From Diadema antillarum (lineage: Eukaryota), in contig NW_027271682.1 in assembly GCF_040938485.1 (NCBI RefSeq), positions 930,001-994,000 on the forward strand: a DNA stretch of 64,000 bases, written 5' to 3'. A program made the translations under genes and the position numbers. The notes under the pieces were generated by a model, which ran no database searches, was not told where the DNA came from, and was given only the letters and a program-made list of their open reading frames with translations. Positions 36,775 to 44,649 of this stretch are shown here, piece by piece; the first letter of the stretch is position 1, and each line of letters begins with the position of its first letter.

Positions 36775-39628
36775 AGAGTGGTGTCCTGTACCTGATGTCA
36801 GTGAAAGTGATGTTGTGTTCACAGTCTCCCTGATGACAGTAGAGATAGGGGTAGCCCAGCCTGACCTTCAGGTCATTGAAGGTCACCTCAGACATCCTGG
36901 CGCTGGTCACCTCACCCTTGATCAGGTCACTCTTGCCCTGCCGCAGCCACTCTCGCACTGGACTGGCATGGGGAGACCAGCAAAGAGAGTGTGAGAGCAG
37001 ATGTGCTTTGATGCCTCTTCGGAAGTACAGGCATGAATTATTATACTCAGTTGACTGCTTCTTTCAATGAACTGGTCAAGGAATTTTGTTACCACATAAT
37101 AATAACAAAAAGAAAATAGTACTATTACTGCTGCTACTATTTATTGTAGGAATACTGATAATGAATTACAATGATGTTGATGATAATGACCAAATCAATA
37201 CTACAATTACCATGAACATCGTCATGATAATAATAATAATCAGGACACGTTAATCACTGAGTGATGTAATGTATTTAAAGGATGTAGAATAGTTGGGGGA
37301 ATGTCATAAAACAAAAAGCTGGGGATTTCACAGACACTCACGCACTAATATCTCTAGCAGCAGGATCTCTCATGTCATTGTAGAAAACATTCTCGATGAA
37401 GAAGTACGAGGACTTGAACAGGTCCTGGGCTCTGATGTCGGTGACCGCATCAGGATTCCCACTGCATTCTCCTTCGATGTAAACCATGTCTAGGGGACAG
37501 ATTAGATTGTCCTTGAGGGCAGTAAGGGGCTGATCTGCATAGACTAGCAACTCACAATCATGCTTCACCTTTCGAAGTAACAAATAAAGAGAGAATCAGG
37601 TATAGTGGGGTCAATTGGTAGGCAGTCACAAAATAGCAAAGTAGAGAGCAATACACCATCATACATGCTCCTGAATTCGCAACAAGTCTTTGCTTTACAG
37701 ATATCTTTGAGTCGCAAAAACAAGGAGGTTAGAAGTTGTAGTGACAAAGTTAATGATACAAAGTACACTGAATTTGTTTTTCAGCATTTTTTTCTTTAAA
37801 AAAAAAGATGAAAGTTTTAACAAAGGCCCCATTTACAATTGAAATCACAGCTGACACTAGTGTTGAATATACAAAATAAATATTGATACAAATAACATTA
37901 TGGTTAATGTATAATCTGTGCCTGTGCCATGTAGAAAGTTAAAGACCTGTCAGCATTGGGAGACTGTGTGATGGAAAGTTGGCTCAATTTAATCAATCTC
38001 CATTCGCTGCCCGCCAGGGTACATTTGAAAAACGCAACTAGCACAGGCCTGATAGAACAGATTTGCTTGTCAGCGAATGTGCACCAATGTGTACGCTCAT
38101 TAGTAGTGTTTGCAGCGCTGAATGTTTGAAATTCTTCAGCTGCCTGTGCTATGTATAAAGCAGCACATAATTTGAATGGTTGTCGGATGGTTATCGGCCA
38201 TTCGACGCCACTCGACCAACCGGTTTGAACCGGTTCAAGACAGCACGCCCCCCGCCACGGCAGGGAACAATAGCAGCACCGCGCCTGGTGATTGGCCATT
38301 GACAGTGGCCAACCACAATGCAGGAGCACCTCGACCAATAGCAGGCCAGCGGCACCGGCCAATGGCAGTCCAGCTCACGCCTCAGTAGACCCGGACAATA
38401 GTGCGCGCCCAGTCGCCCCGGGCCACCTTCACGGCTATATAAACCGCACGCAGCAAAGTCTATGTTCATTGCCTGACGAAGACTAGCAGTTCGCAGTCGA
38501 AACGTCGCAACCTCTCAACATTTGCACATCGTGAGACAACTGATTACTTTCTTCATTCAGCACATAATTTGTTAAGGAGATTCACAAATATGATGCATCA
38601 CGCATTACCCCGGGGTACCACGTTGTGTAGCGCCACCTAACGTCCACTCGAGGACAGCCGCAGGGAAATGCATGCACTGTGTGTGCGTGTACATAGTCGT
38701 TTCCATGCCACTGCATGTTATACTATGCATGCATGGTACGCTGTGCTAGCAATAGCGTGTGCTTCAGTGCAGTGCAGTGTAGTGCAGTGCAGTGGCTAGC
38801 GCGTGCTAGCTCCAGCACCAAAATAATTTCCTACTTTTTGGCACCCAGGGTACAACCATTAAAAAAAATAATAATAATTCAACAAAATGGCTGATTTTTA
38901 TTTGGTACCCCGGGATACCATATATGTCATCACATGTCCACATCATGCCAACCTTCGCAATACAGTGTCCCCATGCTATACCAAGTGTTTAAATGAGTTT
39001 ATCTGCGCGAGTCTGTGGCACTTGTCACCACTCAGCAGTTCTTACCATATGAGAGGCGTGCTGGACTTTCCTGCTGACCGTTACTGATACTGTGAGAAGG
39101 GTGACTGGCCTGTTCAGCGGCTTTGCCGTGGTTGGCTCGTCGTCATAGTAGTACTGGACATGGCATGTGAATAGACGGACAGACTTGCTTTATCATTACA
39201 TGGGTTTAAGAACGTATACAAGAATGAGAAGCACTGTAATGAGTCACATGTGATCTCTCTATTATTTCACTAATGCATAGGAGTGTAAAAAGTGTGAAGC
39301 AAAATAAATGTAACTGCACTACGCAATATCCCTGTGGAAAATTACTGAATGCTTTGAAAAGAAAAAATATGATCAAGGCTACTACTAAAACGCTGAATAA
39401 TCGGTGCTTACGGTATATACACCGAAGAAGGGCAATTTGTCAATTTGTAAGCTGTGATAAAAAACTTGACACAAGAATTCATTAATTACGGTACATATGA
39501 ATATTGTCAGTTGTGTTCTGCCACAACTGGTCTGATAAGATAAGTGCTTGAAATAAGCTATGCCTGTCATTATATTAAAGGGCAATGATGTAGCCCAGTG
39601 ATTTCACTCAGGCACTGTCACACACGCG

Positions 39629-39673
<45 letters not shown>

Positions 39674-41762
39674 TTGGTCAAGGGGAATCTGGGTACTTAC
39701 GTGAGACCATTTACATCGCAAGGGAATTCCACACTGACCGTACTGTCTATAGTTTTCTGCTCTCCTCCTGCAATGCACATTTAAATGTTGAGTACAGAAT
39801 TATATGAGAACAAACCCTCAACAGGTTACATTCACAGATTTTTGCAGCACAGCATGAATTCTGCTGAGATGCATTGTTGATTTTCTCATAATCAAAGTTG
39901 TGTTTGTCTGTTGGCAGGCTTTCTCACCACTTTGGTGATAGGACTTGGGGAGAAATGTGTTACATTATTAATCATCGAAAAGCTTTAAATACAGTGTACA
40001 TAGAGAATCTGAAGATCCATACTAGGTGAAAAAAGAGATCAACATCAAAATACTTCATTACATGTTTGTGATGAAAACAATATTTTTGCAAACTCATTAA
40101 ATAAATTCTATTCATGACTGATACCACCTTTCCATATGTAGAACTCTCCCCCCCCCCCCCCCCAAAAAAAAGAGTTCTACAAAAACTGCCAAACAGAAAC
40201 AGAGACAACTTTCCATGCATGTTATGATCCCAAACTTGCAAATAATTATCTAGAAGAATTGCTCTTTCAGAAAATATTGACACATTCATTTTTTTTTTTA
40301 GTCCTCATGTTCAATTGGGTCTTTCGACTTTTTGTTGGTTTGGTAATGCATGGTCACATTTAACTTTTTGGAAGTAGTCCACAATCACATACACTGTGGG
40401 GAACAATACCTCTGGTATAAAGAACTATGTATTAGGAATATAAAGTTTTGAGTATTATATCCACACAACACTGCACCTGACTGATTCTAGCTGCTCACAG
40501 CCGTCTGGTACCTTGCCATTGACGATGGCGACATGTTTGGCAGTCGGCACACAGGTTGTCATTTCAGAGTGTAATGTGTCTACACTGTAGAAAAAGAAAT
40601 ACAGAGAGGGGGTGCGTGGGGTAGATACACAGAGAGATCAACAAAATATTCGCTAATAGTAACATAGCCATGATGATATGATGTATAGAAGATGACTGTC
40701 ATGAGAAAAAGCACACATGCAATGTTTAATCTTAAGAGTCTGAAAATTTTAGGGGGAATGCTAGATAAATTCTGTATACTCCTGACAACAAAAGTCATCA
40801 TCTCTGAAAACATAAAGATCAATTAATGTGACTAAGTCAATTTATATAGATACAATTGTTGAAAAAGCAGCAACTACATATCAGTCCTTTGAAGATTTAA
40901 CTGAAAATGAAAAATCACAGTAGATATACATTGTATATTTCACGAATGAGAGTACATTGCTTGGTTCCACTCTGCCGTTTCTGTAATCTCTGTGAACAAG
41001 AGTTTGACTAGCATGCCCAGTCAGACCAGCCTCATCAACAGCAGCTCTCCCGTCCCTAACAATCACAATATGCTGGACACAACCTGCAATATACACATTG
41101 TACTCAGCCCAACTGCATAGAGAACCGCTACATGTTACAGCATGTTCCAAAGAACTAGACGCATCTGGAATACTCTCCCACACTCCACCATAGCTTCAAC
41201 TTCTGTCTACAGCTAGATTTCAGGGAACAATGTTACCTGTCATTTGAGACATATTGCCTACCCAAACACTGAAGTTGCTTTTAAAAGAGGGACACGCATG
41301 CACCACCTAGGGCCTACATACTGCACCTAGCACACTATAGAATGTACAAACTGTAAAAGTGGATATCTTTGCGCCAGAGATTTTCTTCAACATTTAAAAG
41401 GTTTAAGTAAATATCTTTGTGAAGGGAAGTTTCATGACACAAACTGTTAAAAACAGATATTAAATAGAGGTCTACAGATATACATTCTTGTTTTTTAAAA
41501 CTCAAGTTCATAATGAAGAAAATACCTGCACACTTTGCGTAACTCTTCTGCTAAGACAGAAGAGACTCCCAGCTCCTTCACAACATCCTCGTCAGGAAGA
41601 TCTCTCACATCAAACCTGAAGTTGGCATCGTCAAGGATGTTCCAGCTCTCCTGGAAGTCGGCCACGGCGACGAGTTTGGAACATGCGCCCTTTGTTTCGT
41701 CTTCCTGCTCATGAGACTCATCAGCTACAGCTGCACACATTCTGTCCAACTTAGCAAGATGT
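33662..41762 (-). CDS. SNAPC3: snRNA-activating protein complex subunit 3 (SNAP50), multi-exon
   Basis: Minus-strand exons 41762-41526, 40584-40512, (possibly 39943-39830), 39153-39046, 37568-37342, 36962-36792, 34579-34472, 33809-33662, with GT-AG introns and consistent phases. The protein includes [88 protein letters not shown] and WMTQED...[27 protein letters not shown] (SNAP50 C-terminal zinc finger). The middle exon boundaries are less certain. Confidence 0.93.
34149..34233. mobile_element. 85-bp piggyBac-type mini-MITE
   Basis: ttaa|cccattgaggac ... gtcctcaatggg|ttaa: perfect 12-bp TIRs with a TTAA duplication. Confidence 0.85.
35941..36272 (+). mobile_element. Second HINE-like element
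   Basis: Starts aactagaaatg...atgcctccgcc, contains tgaccc/tgacct motifs and ends aacatattgcctatggc...gtggtggaggaatta (degenerate subTIR/stem-loop). Confidence 0.5.
36305..36711. mobile_element. Kolobok-type foldback MITE
   Basis: ttaa|agataatataaagttttggtacc ... ggtaccaaaactttatattatct|ttaa, with ~160-bp inverted arms around a short spacer. Confidence 0.85.
38175..38557 (+). mobile_element. 383-bp Penelope-like pLTR / retrozyme-like insertion with 14-bp target-site duplication
   Basis: cagcacataatttg occurs at 38161-38174 and 38558-38571. The insert is GC-rich, with CCAAT boxes, TATATAAA at 38436 and a hammerhead motif. Confidence 0.8.
38469..38510 (+). ncRNA. Minimal type I hammerhead ribozyme
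   Basis: ttgc-CTGACGA-a-gact(a)gc-agttc-gc-agtc-GAAA-cg-TC-gcaa. Stem I is ttgc/gcaa, stem II is 6 bp with one bulge, and stem III is reduced to the palindrome ACGT. The core is intact and cleavage is predicted after C38506. Confidence 0.85.
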
Positions 41763-41957
41763 CTGAAAAGTAGAGACTACTGACTGTTATCAAAGTAAGA
41801 CAGAGTCAGGTAAATTTATTCAAATTTAGTCTGTAGACTGTAGGCCTACTTATTTTCTTCTCTCTCTTTTTTTTTTTGTTGCAATTTTTACGCACTTACG
41901 TACGAGTGCACCTTTACTATACAGTCACTAGAGATCTACATGAAAAGCAAATGATAT

Positions 41958-44649
41958 TGTAGCAGCTCAACTTTCTGCTTCTCTCTCCTCCACAATCTCT
42001 CTCTCTCTCCGCTCCGATCTCTCCGTCTTTCCCCACTCTCTCTCCTCCTCTCTCCGTGGGTCATTGTATCCTCCCCGCTGGTTCTCTCCAAAACAATTCC
42101 AAGGTAACCGCTTGTCAACACTGACCACTTGTTTCATTGTCTCATACCAGAGAGGTGAGTCACCTCTCTGCTGTTCTACATGTATAAATACCGACTGCTC
42201 TTTGTGTAAAAATGCAGAGTGTGTTACAATTTCATCATGAGCGACTTGCTCAGACAACTCGCCTCGGCAGGGCCTCAATAAAACCTCATCTACAATGTAC
42301 GCTCGGAGTGCTCGATGTCTTCATTTCCTATAGTGTATTCGACCTTAATTAATAAGTGAGTAGGTGTTGCTACCACTACCACAATCATCATCCATATCAC
42401 CGCTAAATTGGTGACCCCGTGTTACGAACAACGCAGCAATCATGACGGAAACGACATCAACTCCAACTCCAACCACGCCCGAGCTTGCCTCAACAATGGC
42501 TGCCGACACTACTGCCTCTCTGCACCTTGAGATGGATATTCCTCATCACCTTAGTCCATCTTCCCTTTCTCGGAGCCGATTTTCTGCATCACTGTAATCT
42601 GCTTTTCGACATGCACCACTCAACTTTGCATCAGCGGGATCGCTCCTTTTTCTCGTCACCGGCCCCTTGCCACATCACGACATGCACTCGACCAGCCCGC
42701 GGCCGGCCACTCCCTAGAGCAACTCCCCGACTCAACTGGTTCTCTAAACCATGTTACGCTTACTGCCGTGGAAATTCATTGCACCCATGACGAACTGACA
42801 TCTATTCGACGATTTCGACCCCGCCACTTACGCCGGCACTTACGCTCATCTTTTGCACGTCACAACGTAGTTGATGCGACGACATCGCCCGCCACGCCAA
42901 CAGCAATCATCTTCGAACATGCCATCGCAACGAGCAGGCTGCATGTTTTTGCCCGCCACGATGCCGCCCGGCCGCCGTCTACTTCACCCGCCGCACGCCT
43001 CGACCGTTCCTTCGGCAGGCACGCACGATCGACATCCACGACCGCCTAATCGCCGCACTGACACCAACACCTGCCAGCATCAACCCGCCTTCAACCGCAT
43101 GACGCCATTCGAATCGCTCGAACTCTCGACACGATATGATACGAATTGCTCAACAGCTGTCGCTTCGACACGATACGACACACCGCGATACGAATCGCTC
43201 AACTCTCGCAACGCCACGATACGACTCGACATCGCCGACCGTTGCCGCATCGACCGCCACGAACTCTCGATCGCCCTCTGCCTAACTTTGGCTTGACCTC
43301 GAACACATCGCGCATCGGCTTCTACCGGCACGACTCGCTGCTGCCGCTGGCCATCTCGCGCTTGTCAACTATCAACACGACATCTCCAGGCGACTCACTG
43401 TCCTGTCGAGAGACCGTTGATAGCTGACAATCTGACATCGACATCGACCATCCGCTCACCCCGACTCTCGTCCACGCCACATACGTCCTACTGACTACAG
43501 TTAGTCTTCGTCAACCGCGATAGCCGGACATTACCCGAGCACGTTATAATCGCAAGCGATAAAAAGACTCAGTCATACACAGGACATTCGTGTTGGACAC
43601 TCATTTCACTGCGTGTTTCGTGATTACTTTATCATGTCTGTCAAGTAAGCATCACCTTGCATATTTCAATTGTACTCTGATCATGCTTTAATTCTCTTAA
43701 TTTCTATGTTACCTTTCGATATGCGATAACACGGTTTATAAACACTGCCTGCAACGACACGCGTCAAACTGCCAGTGCTTATTTTTATATTGTCATTTTG
43801 AAACGAATAGCATGTAAATTGACGGAATTATTGTGTGGCCATGTCAGTACTTCATAAACATAATTACCAAATCCCATGCATTTTGATTGTACATGACGCA
43901 TACAATTCGATAAGTTCATTGCTTTGAAACGACTCAGCGTGATTGACATTTGTTCCGTTCGCATTTCTCGAACCAAGTTCACTTTGGCATTGTCATGTAT
44001 ACGATTACATAGCGCGTTTCATGCCTTACAACGGTTCACGAAATTTAACATGAACGAATGTTAGCATGTACGTTTTCCAAACCATTCTGTACATTTTGTA
44101 ATTTCCATGTGTGCTCTAGCCTCGCTGCATACTTTTACATTTTCTATCGTTCCCATCTCTCTCTTTTACCTTTCGAGACGCTCACTAGGGGGGAGCTACT
44201 GTAGCAGCTCAACTTTCTGCTTCTCTCTCCTCCACAATCTCTCTCTCTCTCCGCTCCGATCTCTCCGTCTTTCCCCACTCTCTCTCCTCCTCTCTCCGTG
44301 GGTCATTGTATCCTCCCCGCTGGTTCTCTCCAAAACAATTCCAAGGTAACCGCTTGTCAACACTGACCACTTGTTTCATTGTCTCATACCAGAGAGGTGA
44401 GTCACCTCTCTGCTGTTCTACATGTATAAATACCGACTGCTCTTTGTGTAAAAATGCAGAGTGTGTTACAATTTCATCATGAGCGACTTGCTCAGACAAC
44501 TCGCCTCGGCAGGGCCTCAATAAAACCTCATCTACAATGTACGCTCGGAGTGCTCGATGTCTTCATTTCCTATAGTGTATTCGACCTTAATTAATTAGTG
44601 AGTAGGTGTTGCTACCACTACCACAATCATCATCCATATCACCGCTAAA
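41958..44649 (+). mobile_element. Young non-autonomous Ty3/Gypsy-like LTR retrotransposon (internally deleted)
   Basis: 450-bp LTRs at 41958-42407 and 44200-44649 (one mismatch noticed by eye) and a 4-bp TSD atat (41954-57, 44650-53). The PBS tggtgaccccg (42409-42419) is complementary to the tRNA-Trp 3' end, and the PPT agggggga lies at ~44187-44194. Each LTR has TATAAATA and AATAAA. A protease-end remnant reads WIFLITLVHLPFLGADFLHHCNLLFDM. Confidence 0.93.

What the first reader, a model, noticed from the sequence alone, without database searches (positions are those of the whole stretch)
38175..38557. TSD-flanked mini-retroelement with its own promoter motifs and a minimal hammerhead ribozyme, inside a SNAPC3 intron
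Seen: a 383-bp GC-rich insert bounded by an exact 14-bp direct repeat (cagcacataatttg). It has several CCAAT/ATTGG boxes, TATATAAA at 38436 and, ~30 nt downstream, an intact hammerhead core: CTGACGA, stem II, GAAA-CG-TC, closed by ttgc/gcaa. Established: Penelope-like elements carry minimal type I hammerheads in their pseudo-LTRs, and a palindromic stem III (here ACGT) supports cleavage as dimers. Small non-coding hammerhead retroelements (retrozymes) are known in some metazoans. Inference: this is a protein-free, self-cleaving mobile unit, either a solo pLTR or a monomeric retrozyme, and possibly an undescribed echinoderm family. It is antisense to SNAPC3, so it would not cleave the host pre-mRNA but could drive an antisense intronic transcript.
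Basis: partly seen in the sequence, partly recalled or inferred. Interest (0 to 1): 0.8.

Follow-up and report, generated by a model that had tools for sequence, protein, structure and literature searches.

The report
Truncated Penelope-like retroelement copy with hammerhead
The 383-bp insert is real, but it is an ordinary dead-on-arrival tail fragment of a protein-coding Penelope-like retrotransposon, and its minimal hammerhead ribozyme motif is the kind already described for that class of element.

Summary
An exact 14-bp direct repeat (38161-38174 and 38558-38571) flanks a GC-rich insert of 57% GC against about 39% in the flanks. The insert has three CCAAT/ATTGG boxes, TATATAAA at 38436-38443 and a hammerhead core at 38469-38510.

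The insert is not a protein-free mini-retroelement or retrozyme. It is the 3'-terminal ~373 bp of an autonomous Penelope-like element (PLE), cut short at its 5' end. Another copy in the same genome carries a 616-aa reverse transcriptase/GIY-YIG endonuclease frame that runs straight into this sequence. Window 38188-38385 encodes the last 66 codons of that frame, followed by the stop codon and the 3'UTR.

Other copies show the PLE hallmarks:
- inverted 5'-truncated arms;
- target duplications of variable length (9-13 bp);
- a 31-nt "tail" at one end only.

The hammerhead has the published traits of metazoan PLE minimal hammerheads: an extra base after A9, a G10.1-C11.1 pair, and a palindromic ACGU with no loop III. 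A homologous locus on contig C289 lacks the insert. The fragment lies antisense to SNAPC3 exons, probably in an intron. Catalysis and promoter activity remain untested. This is a new member of a known kind, of low interest.

The parts
38161..38174 (.). Left copy of the target-site duplication. The strict duplication is 38163-38174, GCACATAATTTG.
   Evidence: Exact 14-mer found twice in the window. Other copies end in ...CATTCA, so the CA is ambiguous.
38175..38186 (+). 12-nt junction filler AATGGTTGTCGG, a near-duplicate of the first bases of the element fragment (ATGGTTATCGG at 38187-38197).
   Evidence: In the alignment with four other copies, homology starts at about 38186/38187.
38187..38559 (+). 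5'-truncated 3' end of a Penelope-like retroelement: the end of the ORF plus the 3'UTR (the pseudo-LTR part).
   Evidence: At least 60 matches of 87-97% identity in the same genome. Colinear with the 3' end of a 616-aa RT/GIY-YIG ORF in L033.
38188..38388 (+). In-frame remnant of the last 66 codons of the RT/GIY-YIG ORF, with the stop codon TAG at 38386-38388. It lies downstream of the catalytic GIY-YIG residues.
   Evidence: tblastn: 86% identity to ORF residues 558-616, E=6e-29. Translation.
38291..38363 (+). ATTGG (38291) and CCAAT (38335, 38359) boxes, inside the coding tail and invariant in the five aligned copies.
38436..38443 (+). TATATAAA in the 3'UTR, intact in 15 of the 16 distinct copies that cover it. 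Candidate pseudo-LTR promoter; not tested.
   Evidence: About 15 truncated copies start 14-24 nt downstream of it.
38469..38510 (+). Minimal type I hammerhead motif (min-HHR) on the element's sense strand, with the predicted cut between 38506 and 38507.
   Evidence: The only descriptor hit in 64 kb, with 0 hits in 200 simulated windows. The descriptor recovered 43 hits in the fetched loci, which overlap one another, in seven sequence variants; the 25 distinct copies are aligned. The MFE fold recovers helices I and II. Its features match PMC4209133.
38558..38571 (.). Right copy of the target-site duplication. 38558-38559 (CA) is probably the element's last two bases.
37341..37553 (-). SNAPC3 exon nearest the insert, matching human SNAPC3 residues 203-271.
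   Evidence: PF12251 hit at 37335-37553 on the minus strand. phmmer against PDB 7xur_B, E=5.9e-12.
36788..37057 (-). SNAPC3 exon (Pfam positions 38-122). A contig of run X1 supports 36792-36962.
38588..38936 (.). An unrelated high-copy repeat of about 350 bp that starts 16 bp to the right of the insert. It is not part of the element.
   Evidence: 727 first-look candidates, with the 39 other copies scored at 89-96% identity. Also absent from C289.

Best explanation
Window 38187-38559 is a dead-on-arrival, 5'-truncated copy of an autonomous endonuclease-encoding (EN+) Penelope-like retrotransposon.

Inferred mechanism, from the published PLE model:
- The element's GIY-YIG endonuclease nicked an AT-rich target (GCACATAATTTG) in the SNAPC3 locus.
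- Its reverse transcriptase began cDNA synthesis at the proximal of two initiation sites (...CATTCA).
- It copied only about 373 nt of the RNA's 3' part and then stopped or switched template. Twelve filler bases were added at the junction.
- Staggered second-strand cleavage produced the 12-14 bp target duplication.

The fragment therefore carries passively what lies in the 3' part of the parent element: the last 66 codons of the ORF, a TATA/CCAAT region that probably serves as the pseudo-LTR promoter in tandem copies, and the PLE minimal hammerhead.

That hammerhead has no helix III of its own. By the published model it could cleave only when paired through its palindromic ACGU with a second copy, or with help from the element's protein. 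A lone fragment like this one is therefore expected to be catalytically silent.

Shown here: family membership, colinearity with the ORF, the motif anatomy, the target duplication, and an insert-free homologous locus. Inferred: the integration steps, promoter use, and ribozyme activity.
For: - **Copy number.** The same genome has at least 60 matches to the 383 bp.
- **Protein-coding parent.** In L033 (C245) a 616-aa open frame runs into this sequence. It hits RVT_1 at E=2.8e-10. Its C-terminal part hits GIY-YIG at E=0.006. The translation shows ADKG, GVVY..C..C..YIGET and H.H, that is, the DKG and CCHH motifs. A longer but stop-interrupted copy (L041) extends the frame about 215 aa upstream without a stop.
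- **Coding remnant.** Window 38188-38385 translates in frame to the last 66 residues, then a stop codon.
- **Composite copies.** Six examined composite copies (L031, L032, L033, L034/L035, L036, L037) consist of an inverted 5'-truncated arm plus a forward arm, and L014 shows the same layout. Each is flanked by its own 9-13 bp duplication, and each has a 31-nt tail at only one outer end. PMC8557442 and PMC11167929 describe these structures for PLEs.
- **Hammerhead.** It is the only descriptor hit in the window, with 0 hits in 200 simulations. Most family copies keep it. It has the extra base between A9 and 10.1, the G10.1-C11.1 pair and the palindromic 15.2/16.2 that PMC4209133 lists as emergent traits of PLE min-HHRs.
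- **Insert-free locus.** On C289 the left flank ends at 1600197 and the sequence beyond the neighbouring repeat resumes at 1600222. That is 24 bp where the window has 765 bp. No C289 match to the insert appears.
- **Many PLE families.** The first look with the ORF gave 1663 candidates, with scored copies at 40-59% identity and open frames of 800-1100 aa.
- **Related proteins.** Atlas neighbours are animal proteins with RVT_1 and GIY-YIG.
Against: - Rfam hammerhead models do not score the motif.
- No compensatory changes could be counted.
- The GIY-YIG Pfam match is below the curated cut-off (17.3 against 22.6 bits).
- No intact full-length copy of this family was seen. The stop-free ORF copy lacks the N-terminal ~215 aa, and the longer copies carry stops.
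- The empty-site junction on C289 was inferred from coordinates, not read. Patterns built for the joined site did not match at 3 or fewer mismatches.
- C289 differs by 7-14% in the flanks, so it may be a paralogous duplicate rather than an allele.
Confidence: 0.92

Rival explanations
1. The insert is a member of a protein-free, non-autonomous hammerhead retroelement family (a retrozyme-like or mini-PLE unit) that is mobilised as such.
For: - Short copies far outnumber ORF-bearing ones.
- A 2026 preprint argues that animal non-LTR retrozymes derive from PLE pseudo-LTRs.
Against: - No other listed copy shares the window's 5' end. The 5' ends are scattered at query positions 7, 13, 26, 83, 224, 240-259, 276-301 and 326-347, as expected from independent truncations.
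- No tandem arrays of the unit were seen.
- The first half of the insert is in-frame coding sequence of the autonomous element.
- The composites all differ in arm lengths.
Confidence: 0.04
2. The fragment has been co-opted. Its TATA/CCAAT region drives an antisense transcript within the SNAPC3 locus, with or without hammerhead processing.
For: - TATATAAA and the CCAAT boxes are intact in this copy.
- About 15 family copies have 5' ends 14-24 nt downstream of the TATA box. This hints that the promoter works in source copies.
- A contig of the family is present in run X1, which looks like a transcriptome.
Against: - The X1 contig continues 520 nt into ORF sequence upstream of 38187, so it comes from another copy, not this locus.
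- No contig joins the insert to its right flank.
- The insert is absent from the C289 homologue, so it is recent or polymorphic rather than conserved.
Confidence: 0.06
3. The insert is a solo LTR of an LTR retrotransposon. It can be read as TG...CA, with terminal inverted hexamers TGAATG...CATTCA.
For: If the boundaries are shifted to 38173-38559, the ends read TGAATG...CATTCA. Promoter-like boxes are typical of the U3 region of an LTR.
Against: - The left TG belongs to the target duplication and to the filler, not to the family. Homology with other copies starts at 38186/38187 and continues upstream into an RT/EN ORF in them.
- The duplication would be 10 bp, not 4-6 bp.
- Other copies have inverted arms and a one-sided tail.
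Confidence: 0.01

Closest known systems
Canonical C-terminal-endonuclease (EN+) Penelope-like elements, Penelope/Poseidon type (Evgen'ev and Arkhipova 2005; Craig et al. 2021, PMC8557442; Frangieh et al. 2024, PMC11167929)
   Same: [quoted passage not shown]
- Heavy 5' truncation.
- Inverted 5'-truncated partner copies.
- Target duplications of variable length at AT-rich sites.
- A 30-40 nt tail at one end only.
- A hammerhead in the pseudo-LTR.
   Different: - The clade was not established by phylogeny. I only note that no CX2-5CxxC zinc finger is visible in the RT-EN linker, which argues against Neptune and Nematis.
- Here a TATA box with CCAAT boxes sits in the pseudo-LTR, whereas Drosophila Penelope is reported to use a TATA-less internal promoter.
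- In the anole element the hammerhead overlaps the ORF start. Here it lies about 50 nt before the proximal end of the unit.
Minimal hammerheads (min-HHR) of metazoan PLEs (Cervera and de la Pena 2014, PMC4209133)
   Same: - Type I topology.
- Short helix I (4 bp).
- One unpaired base between A9 and 10.1.
- A G10.1-C11.1 pair.
- No helix III loop.
- Palindromic 15.2/16.2 (ACGU), which allows a dimeric helix III.
- Mostly found as single motifs in truncated PLE copies.
   Different: Helix II here is 4 bp, a bulged A, then 2 bp, rather than the 7-8 bp reported for the Schistosoma families. A bulge in helix II was described for D. virilis. Activity was not tested here.
Non-LTR retrozymes of animals (Cervera and de la Pena 2020; Li et al. 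2026 preprint, 10.64898/2026.07.22.740005)
   Same: Hammerhead-bearing, non-coding sequence related to the PLE pseudo-LTR.
   Different: Retrozymes are tandem repeats with a hammerhead in each unit, and they give circular RNAs. This is a single dispersed fragment that contains ORF sequence and has its own target duplication.

Membership tests
Penelope-like element (EN+, canonical) | A reverse transcriptase domain in a single ORF of the family | tested here: met
   RVT_1 at E=2.8e-10, 40.7 bits, above the 29.6 cut-off, in L033:6872-8722. The window fragment itself holds no RT sequence.
Penelope-like element (EN+, canonical) | [quoted passage not shown] | tested here: inconclusive
   Pfam GIY-YIG at E=0.006, 17.3 bits, below the 22.6 cut-off. 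The motifs GVVY-x3-C-x2-C-x3-YIGET and H-x-H can be read in the translation. Atlas neighbours carry GIY-YIG.
Penelope-like element (EN+, canonical) | Pseudo-LTR architecture: partial tandem or inverted 5'-truncated copies flanking the unit | tested here: met
   An inverted arm plus a forward arm in L031, L032, L033, L036, L037, L014 and L018. Direct tandems were not seen in the loci fetched.
Penelope-like element (EN+, canonical) | A 30-40 nt tail extension at only one end of an insertion | tested here: met
   A 31-nt tail after ...CATTCA at one outer end in nine loci, which represent about seven distinct insertions, never at both ends. The window copy uses the short end and has no tail.
Penelope-like element (EN+, canonical) | The RT groups with PLE/TERT reverse transcriptases in a phylogeny | not tested
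   No reference PLE, LINE or TERT set was on hand. The large protein searches were not spent on this.
PLE minimal hammerhead (min-HHR) | Core CUGANGA ... GAAA ... UH with helices I and II in type I topology and no helix III loop | tested here: met
   The MFE fold recovers helices I and II.
PLE minimal hammerhead (min-HHR) | [quoted passage not shown] | tested here: met
   A38480; G38481 with C38498; C38503 with G38504. The criteria come from PMC4209133.
PLE minimal hammerhead (min-HHR) | Helices supported by covariation across families | not tested
Variation within the family is mostly in the helix II loop base 38493 (C, T or A) and in scattered single-copy decay.
PLE minimal hammerhead (min-HHR) | Self-cleavage as a dimer or with help from the element's protein | not testable with these tools
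   Needs an in vitro transcription and cleavage assay.
Rfam hammerhead families (type I, type III, HH9, HH10, type II) | A covariance-model score at or above the gathering threshold | tested here: not met
   No hit at the gathering threshold over the whole window, nor at E<=10 over 38100-38650. These models expect a closed helix III.
Non-LTR retrozyme | Tandem repeats of a short non-coding unit, each with a hammerhead | tested here: not met
   The window holds a single copy. The genome matches are dispersed or inverted pairs, not head-to-tail arrays. The fragment contains ORF sequence.

The most novel reading that the evidence does not exclude
In this PLE family the C-terminal coding tail doubles as a CCAAT/TATA promoter, and source RNAs start about 20 nt after the TATA box and near the hammerhead. 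Two pile-ups of copy 5' ends suggest this, one at window-equivalent 38450-38460 and one at 38513-38521. The second lies 10 nt downstream of the predicted cut and begins at an AACGTT palindrome. Those pile-ups would then be genomic footprints of promoter use and of ribozyme-processed or template-switched RNAs in vivo. Solo fragments such as this one could seed antisense transcripts in host introns.
Probability: 0.12. Interest if true: 0.45.

Novelty: new member of a known kind. Interest (0 to 1): 0.2.

Why it matters
Mostly as annotation. The result shows that a striking-looking "promoter plus ribozyme" cassette in a host intron is a routine by-product of Penelope-like element activity. Thousands of such lone minimal hammerheads in animal genomes have already been attributed to truncated PLEs. 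It also documents that this genome holds many PLE families with long open frames, and one family whose copies display the two-site "tail" signature very cleanly. That family could serve as comparative material for the still poorly understood PLE integration mechanism.

Tried and rejected
- **Rfam scans** gave no hammerhead. I rejected this as evidence against the motif, because these models require a helix III.
- **Solo-LTR reading (TG...CA).** Rejected by the alignment with ORF-bearing copies.
- **Histone-like or host promoter capture.** I considered this because of the CCAAT/TATA/CATTG layout. I rejected it because the boxes lie in PLE coding sequence and 3'UTR.
- **16-kb interval on C54.** It lies between two arms that share a duplication. 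I looked there for a giant element and found only short ORFs. It is probably a composite with later insertions, and I did not pursue it.
- **Empty-site patterns.** Patterns of 39 and 30 nt at 3 or fewer mismatches found no C289 junction. The insert-free state rests on match coordinates only.
- **Cross-family hammerhead test.** I did not try another tool for it.
- **RNA evidence.** Only one run, held as contigs, carries any part of the stretch. It shows a family contig from another copy, with no starts, ends or strand.
- **Candidate N-terminal SNAPC3 exon at 41495-41749.** It gave no SNAPC3 match in PDB sequences, so intron status is probable but not proven.
Full report
**1. Observation**

The sequence is as described.
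- CAGCACATAATTTG occurs exactly twice in the 64 kb, at 38161-38174 and 38558-38571. About 0.08 matches are expected by chance.
- The 383 bp between the two copies is 56.7% GC, against 38.8% and 42.5% in the flanking kilobases.
- CCAAT is at 38335 and 38359, ATTGG at 38291, and TATATAAA at 38436-38443.
- The hammerhead elements are in place:
  - TTGC 38469-38472
  - CTGACGA 38473-38479
  - an unpaired A at 38480
  - GACT 38481-38484 pairing with AGTC 38495-38498, with an inner GC/GC pair after a bulged A
  - GAAA 38499-38502
  - C, G, T, C at 38503-38506
  - GCAA 38507-38510

I wrote a descriptor for this minimal form: CUGANGA, 0-1 extra base, helix II of at least 4 bp, GAAA, a palindromic dinucleotide, U, H, and helix I of at least 4 bp. 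It finds this one site on both strands of the window. It finds none in 200 first-order Markov simulations of the window.

Rfam reports no hammerhead at the gathering threshold or at E<=10 on 38100-38650. I take this as uninformative, because the Rfam hammerhead models include a closed helix III, which this motif lacks.

**2. What it is**

*Copies in the genome.* The window's own genome (1.75 Gb; the window is C794:930001-994000) holds at least 60 matches to the 383 bp at 87-97% identity. Nearly all reach the 3' end of the query. Their 5' ends are scattered, which is the pattern of 5'-truncated retrotransposon copies.

*Ends and flanks of other copies.*
- Every copy ends in ...CTTTCTTCATTCA.
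- Copies usually come as an inverted 5'-truncated arm next to a forward arm.
- Each such composite is flanked by its own direct repeat of 9-13 bp, for example AAAGAGACA in L032, TGATTAGATAATA in L033 and ATGATGATGTT in L037.
- One outer end of each composite, and only one, carries 31 extra bases (TTCTTCACCACGATGAACCTCTTCCAATCCA) after ...CATTCA.

*The protein-coding parent.* In L033 (C245) the 2.1-kb composite contains an open frame of 616 aa.
- It hits Pfam RVT_1 at E=2.8e-10.
- Its C-terminal third hits GIY-YIG weakly, at E=0.006, below the curated cut-off.
- The translation shows ILPADKG (the DKG motif), GVVYKIPCSTCDKVYIGET and ERMHEH (GIY...YIG with CCHH).
- This frame runs into the repeat. 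Its last 59 residues align to window 38188-38385 at 86% identity (66 aligned positions, E=6e-29), and the stop codon follows at 38386-38388.

*Longer copies.* A longer copy (L041, with a twin in L038) extends the frame about 215 residues further upstream without a stop (about 260 back to the end of the preceding repeat sequence) and includes an LSKGPNF motif. It carries stop codons further down.

*Other PLE families.* The genome also holds many more distant relatives at 40-59% identity, with open frames of 800-1100 aa. The first look gave 1663 candidates. Atlas neighbours of the ORF are animal proteins with RVT_1 and, in one cluster, GIY-YIG.

*The 5' junction.* The alignment of the window with four other copies shows that homology starts at 38186/38187. 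In the other copies it continues upstream into the ORF. In the window it is preceded by 12 bases (AATGGTTGTCGG) that nearly repeat the next 11, and then by the left copy of the duplication.

*Conclusion.* The insert is therefore the 3'-terminal ~373 bp of an EN+ Penelope-like element, truncated at its 5' end. It holds 66 codons of coding tail (past the endonuclease catalytic residues) and a 171-nt 3'UTR. The CCAAT and ATTGG boxes lie inside the coding tail. The TATA box and the hammerhead lie in the 3'UTR, on the element's sense strand.

**3. Agreement with published PLE biology**

Craig et al. 2021 (PMC8557442) describe the following for PLEs:
- heavy 5' truncation;
- partial tandems that form pseudo-LTRs;
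- an inverted 5'-truncated copy adjacent at the 5' end;
- a 30-40 bp tail often present at only one end;
- hammerheads in the pseudo-LTRs of canonical clades.

Frangieh et al. 2024 (PMC11167929) show that a purified PLE protein cuts AT-rich DNA and starts reverse transcription at two adjacent internal sites of the RNA. The tail is the stretch between the two sites. The short end and the long end seen here, 31 nt apart, fit that signature. So do the AT-rich duplicated targets.

Cervera and de la Pena 2014 (PMC4209133) defined the minimal hammerhead of metazoan PLEs as a motif without helix III or loop 3 that can form a dimeric helix III. [quoted passage not shown] They add that most such motifs occur singly and are probably truncated PLEs. 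The window motif has all three traits: A38480, G38481 with C38498, and C38503 with G38504.

Within the family, the motif's main polymorphism is the helix II loop base 38493 (C here, T or A elsewhere). The other changes are scattered single-copy decay. The MFE fold of 38462-38516 recovers helices I and II.

No covariation test was possible.

**4. Context**

*SNAPC3.* SNAPC3-domain exons (PF12251) lie on the minus strand at 33686-33811, 36788-37057 and 37335-37553. The last of these matches human SNAPC3 residues 203-271 at E=5.9e-12. About 200 N-terminal residues should therefore be encoded further to the right. The insert, 600 bp to the right of that exon and on the opposite strand, is then antisense and probably intronic.

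I could not identify the upstream exons. A candidate at 41495-41749 gave no SNAPC3 match.

*Neighbouring repeats.* The surroundings are rich in repeats. Window 37940-38160 matches many loci at 72-83% identity. Window 38588-38936 is a separate high-copy repeat.

*Insert-free homologous locus.* A second SNAPC3 locus on C289 is 86-93% identical in the flanks. There the left flank, including one copy of the duplicated site, ends at 1600197. The sequence to the right of the neighbouring repeat resumes at 1600222. That leaves 24 bp where the window has 765 bp, and one search lists no C289 match to the insert. Both insertions are therefore absent from that homologue.

I did not see the junction letters, and the reconstructed empty-site patterns did not match at 3 or fewer mismatches. 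Whether C289 is the other haplotype or a duplicate is open. The assembly has several such near-identical locus pairs.

**5. RNA**

Only one public run holds any part of the stretch. It is kept as contigs, and its RNA label is a guess.
- A 950-nt contig touches only 36792-36962, which suggests a spliced SNAPC3 mRNA and so a transcriptome.
- A 924-nt contig covers 38187-38558 with 8 differences. It continues 520 nt upstream into ORF sequence and 32 nt downstream, which is about the tail's length (31 nt). That contig comes from another copy of the family.

This says nothing about transcription, start sites or cleavage at this locus.

**6. Mechanism**

- *Shown:* family membership, colinearity with the ORF, the target duplication, the motif anatomy, and an insert-free homologue.
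- *Inferred from the literature cited above:*
  - target-primed reverse transcription from the proximal initiation site, with early termination;
  - promoter function of the TATA/CCAAT region in tandem source copies;
  - a hammerhead that needs a second copy or the element's protein to cleave, so that a lone fragment is expected to be inactive.

**7. Verdict**

The idea of a protein-free, self-contained mobile unit or retrozyme is not supported. "Echinoderm" was not tested.

This is a new copy of a known kind of element with a known kind of ribozyme motif, so interest is low.

The most novel reading still open concerns the pile-ups of copy 5' ends, one just after the TATA box and one 10 nt past the predicted cut. 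These may be in vivo footprints of promoter use and RNA processing. I give that about 12%.

Noticed in passing
Family copies listed; window equivalents 38450-38460 and 38513-38521: The 5' ends of truncated copies pile up at two places. About 15 fall at query 276-286, which is 14-24 nt after the start of TATATAAA. About 24 fall at query 339-347. The second pile-up begins at the palindrome AACGTT (AACATT in the window), 10 nt downstream of the predicted hammerhead cut. Some of these matches are haplotig duplicates, so the number of independent events is lower.
   Followed up: partly
G000 C1479:296811-296886, C300:1083698-1083773, C456:2159164-2159239, C76:3868331-3868406 and others: Several loci hold tiny 76-bp inverted pairs of the element's last 41 nt, with the two arms overlapping by the 6-nt palindrome AACGTT. 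They could be snap-back or template-switch products, or a miniature amplified palindrome. The letters could not be fetched.
   Followed up: no
window 38175-38197: The 12 bases at the 5' junction (AATGGTTGTCGG) nearly duplicate the first 11 bases of the element fragment (ATGGTTATCGG). This looks like a junction micro-duplication from template slippage or switching at the end of reverse transcription.
   Followed up: partly
window 38588-38936: An unrelated repeat of about 350 bp with hundreds of copies at 89-96% identity (727 first-look candidates) starts 16 bp to the right of the insert. It is also missing from the C289 homologue.
   Followed up: partly
window 37940-38160: The left flank of the insert matches many loci at 72-83% identity. 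It is an older dispersed repeat, so the PLE fragment landed next to or inside older repeat sequence.
   Followed up: no
G000 locus pairs C245/C48, C54/C762, C351/C1659, C794/C289: Pairs of contigs carry the same PLE insertions, or the same SNAPC3 locus, with matching internal spacing. The C245 and C48 ORFs are 100% identical. The assembly seems to contain uncollapsed haplotigs or recent large duplications, which inflates copy counts.
   Followed up: no
L034/L035, G000 C54:3057167-3073194: An inverted arm and a tailed forward arm 16 kb apart share a matching flank duplication (AGTGCCTACA). The interval holds a stop-interrupted copy of the ORF and no other ORF above 215 aa. It may be one old composite insertion later filled by other sequence.
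   Followed up: partly
window 41936-42278 and 44196-44520: Two identical minus-strand ORF pairs (103 aa and 55-61 aa, with the same translations) lie about 2.2 kb apart. This points to a local duplication or two copies of another repeat.
   Followed up: no
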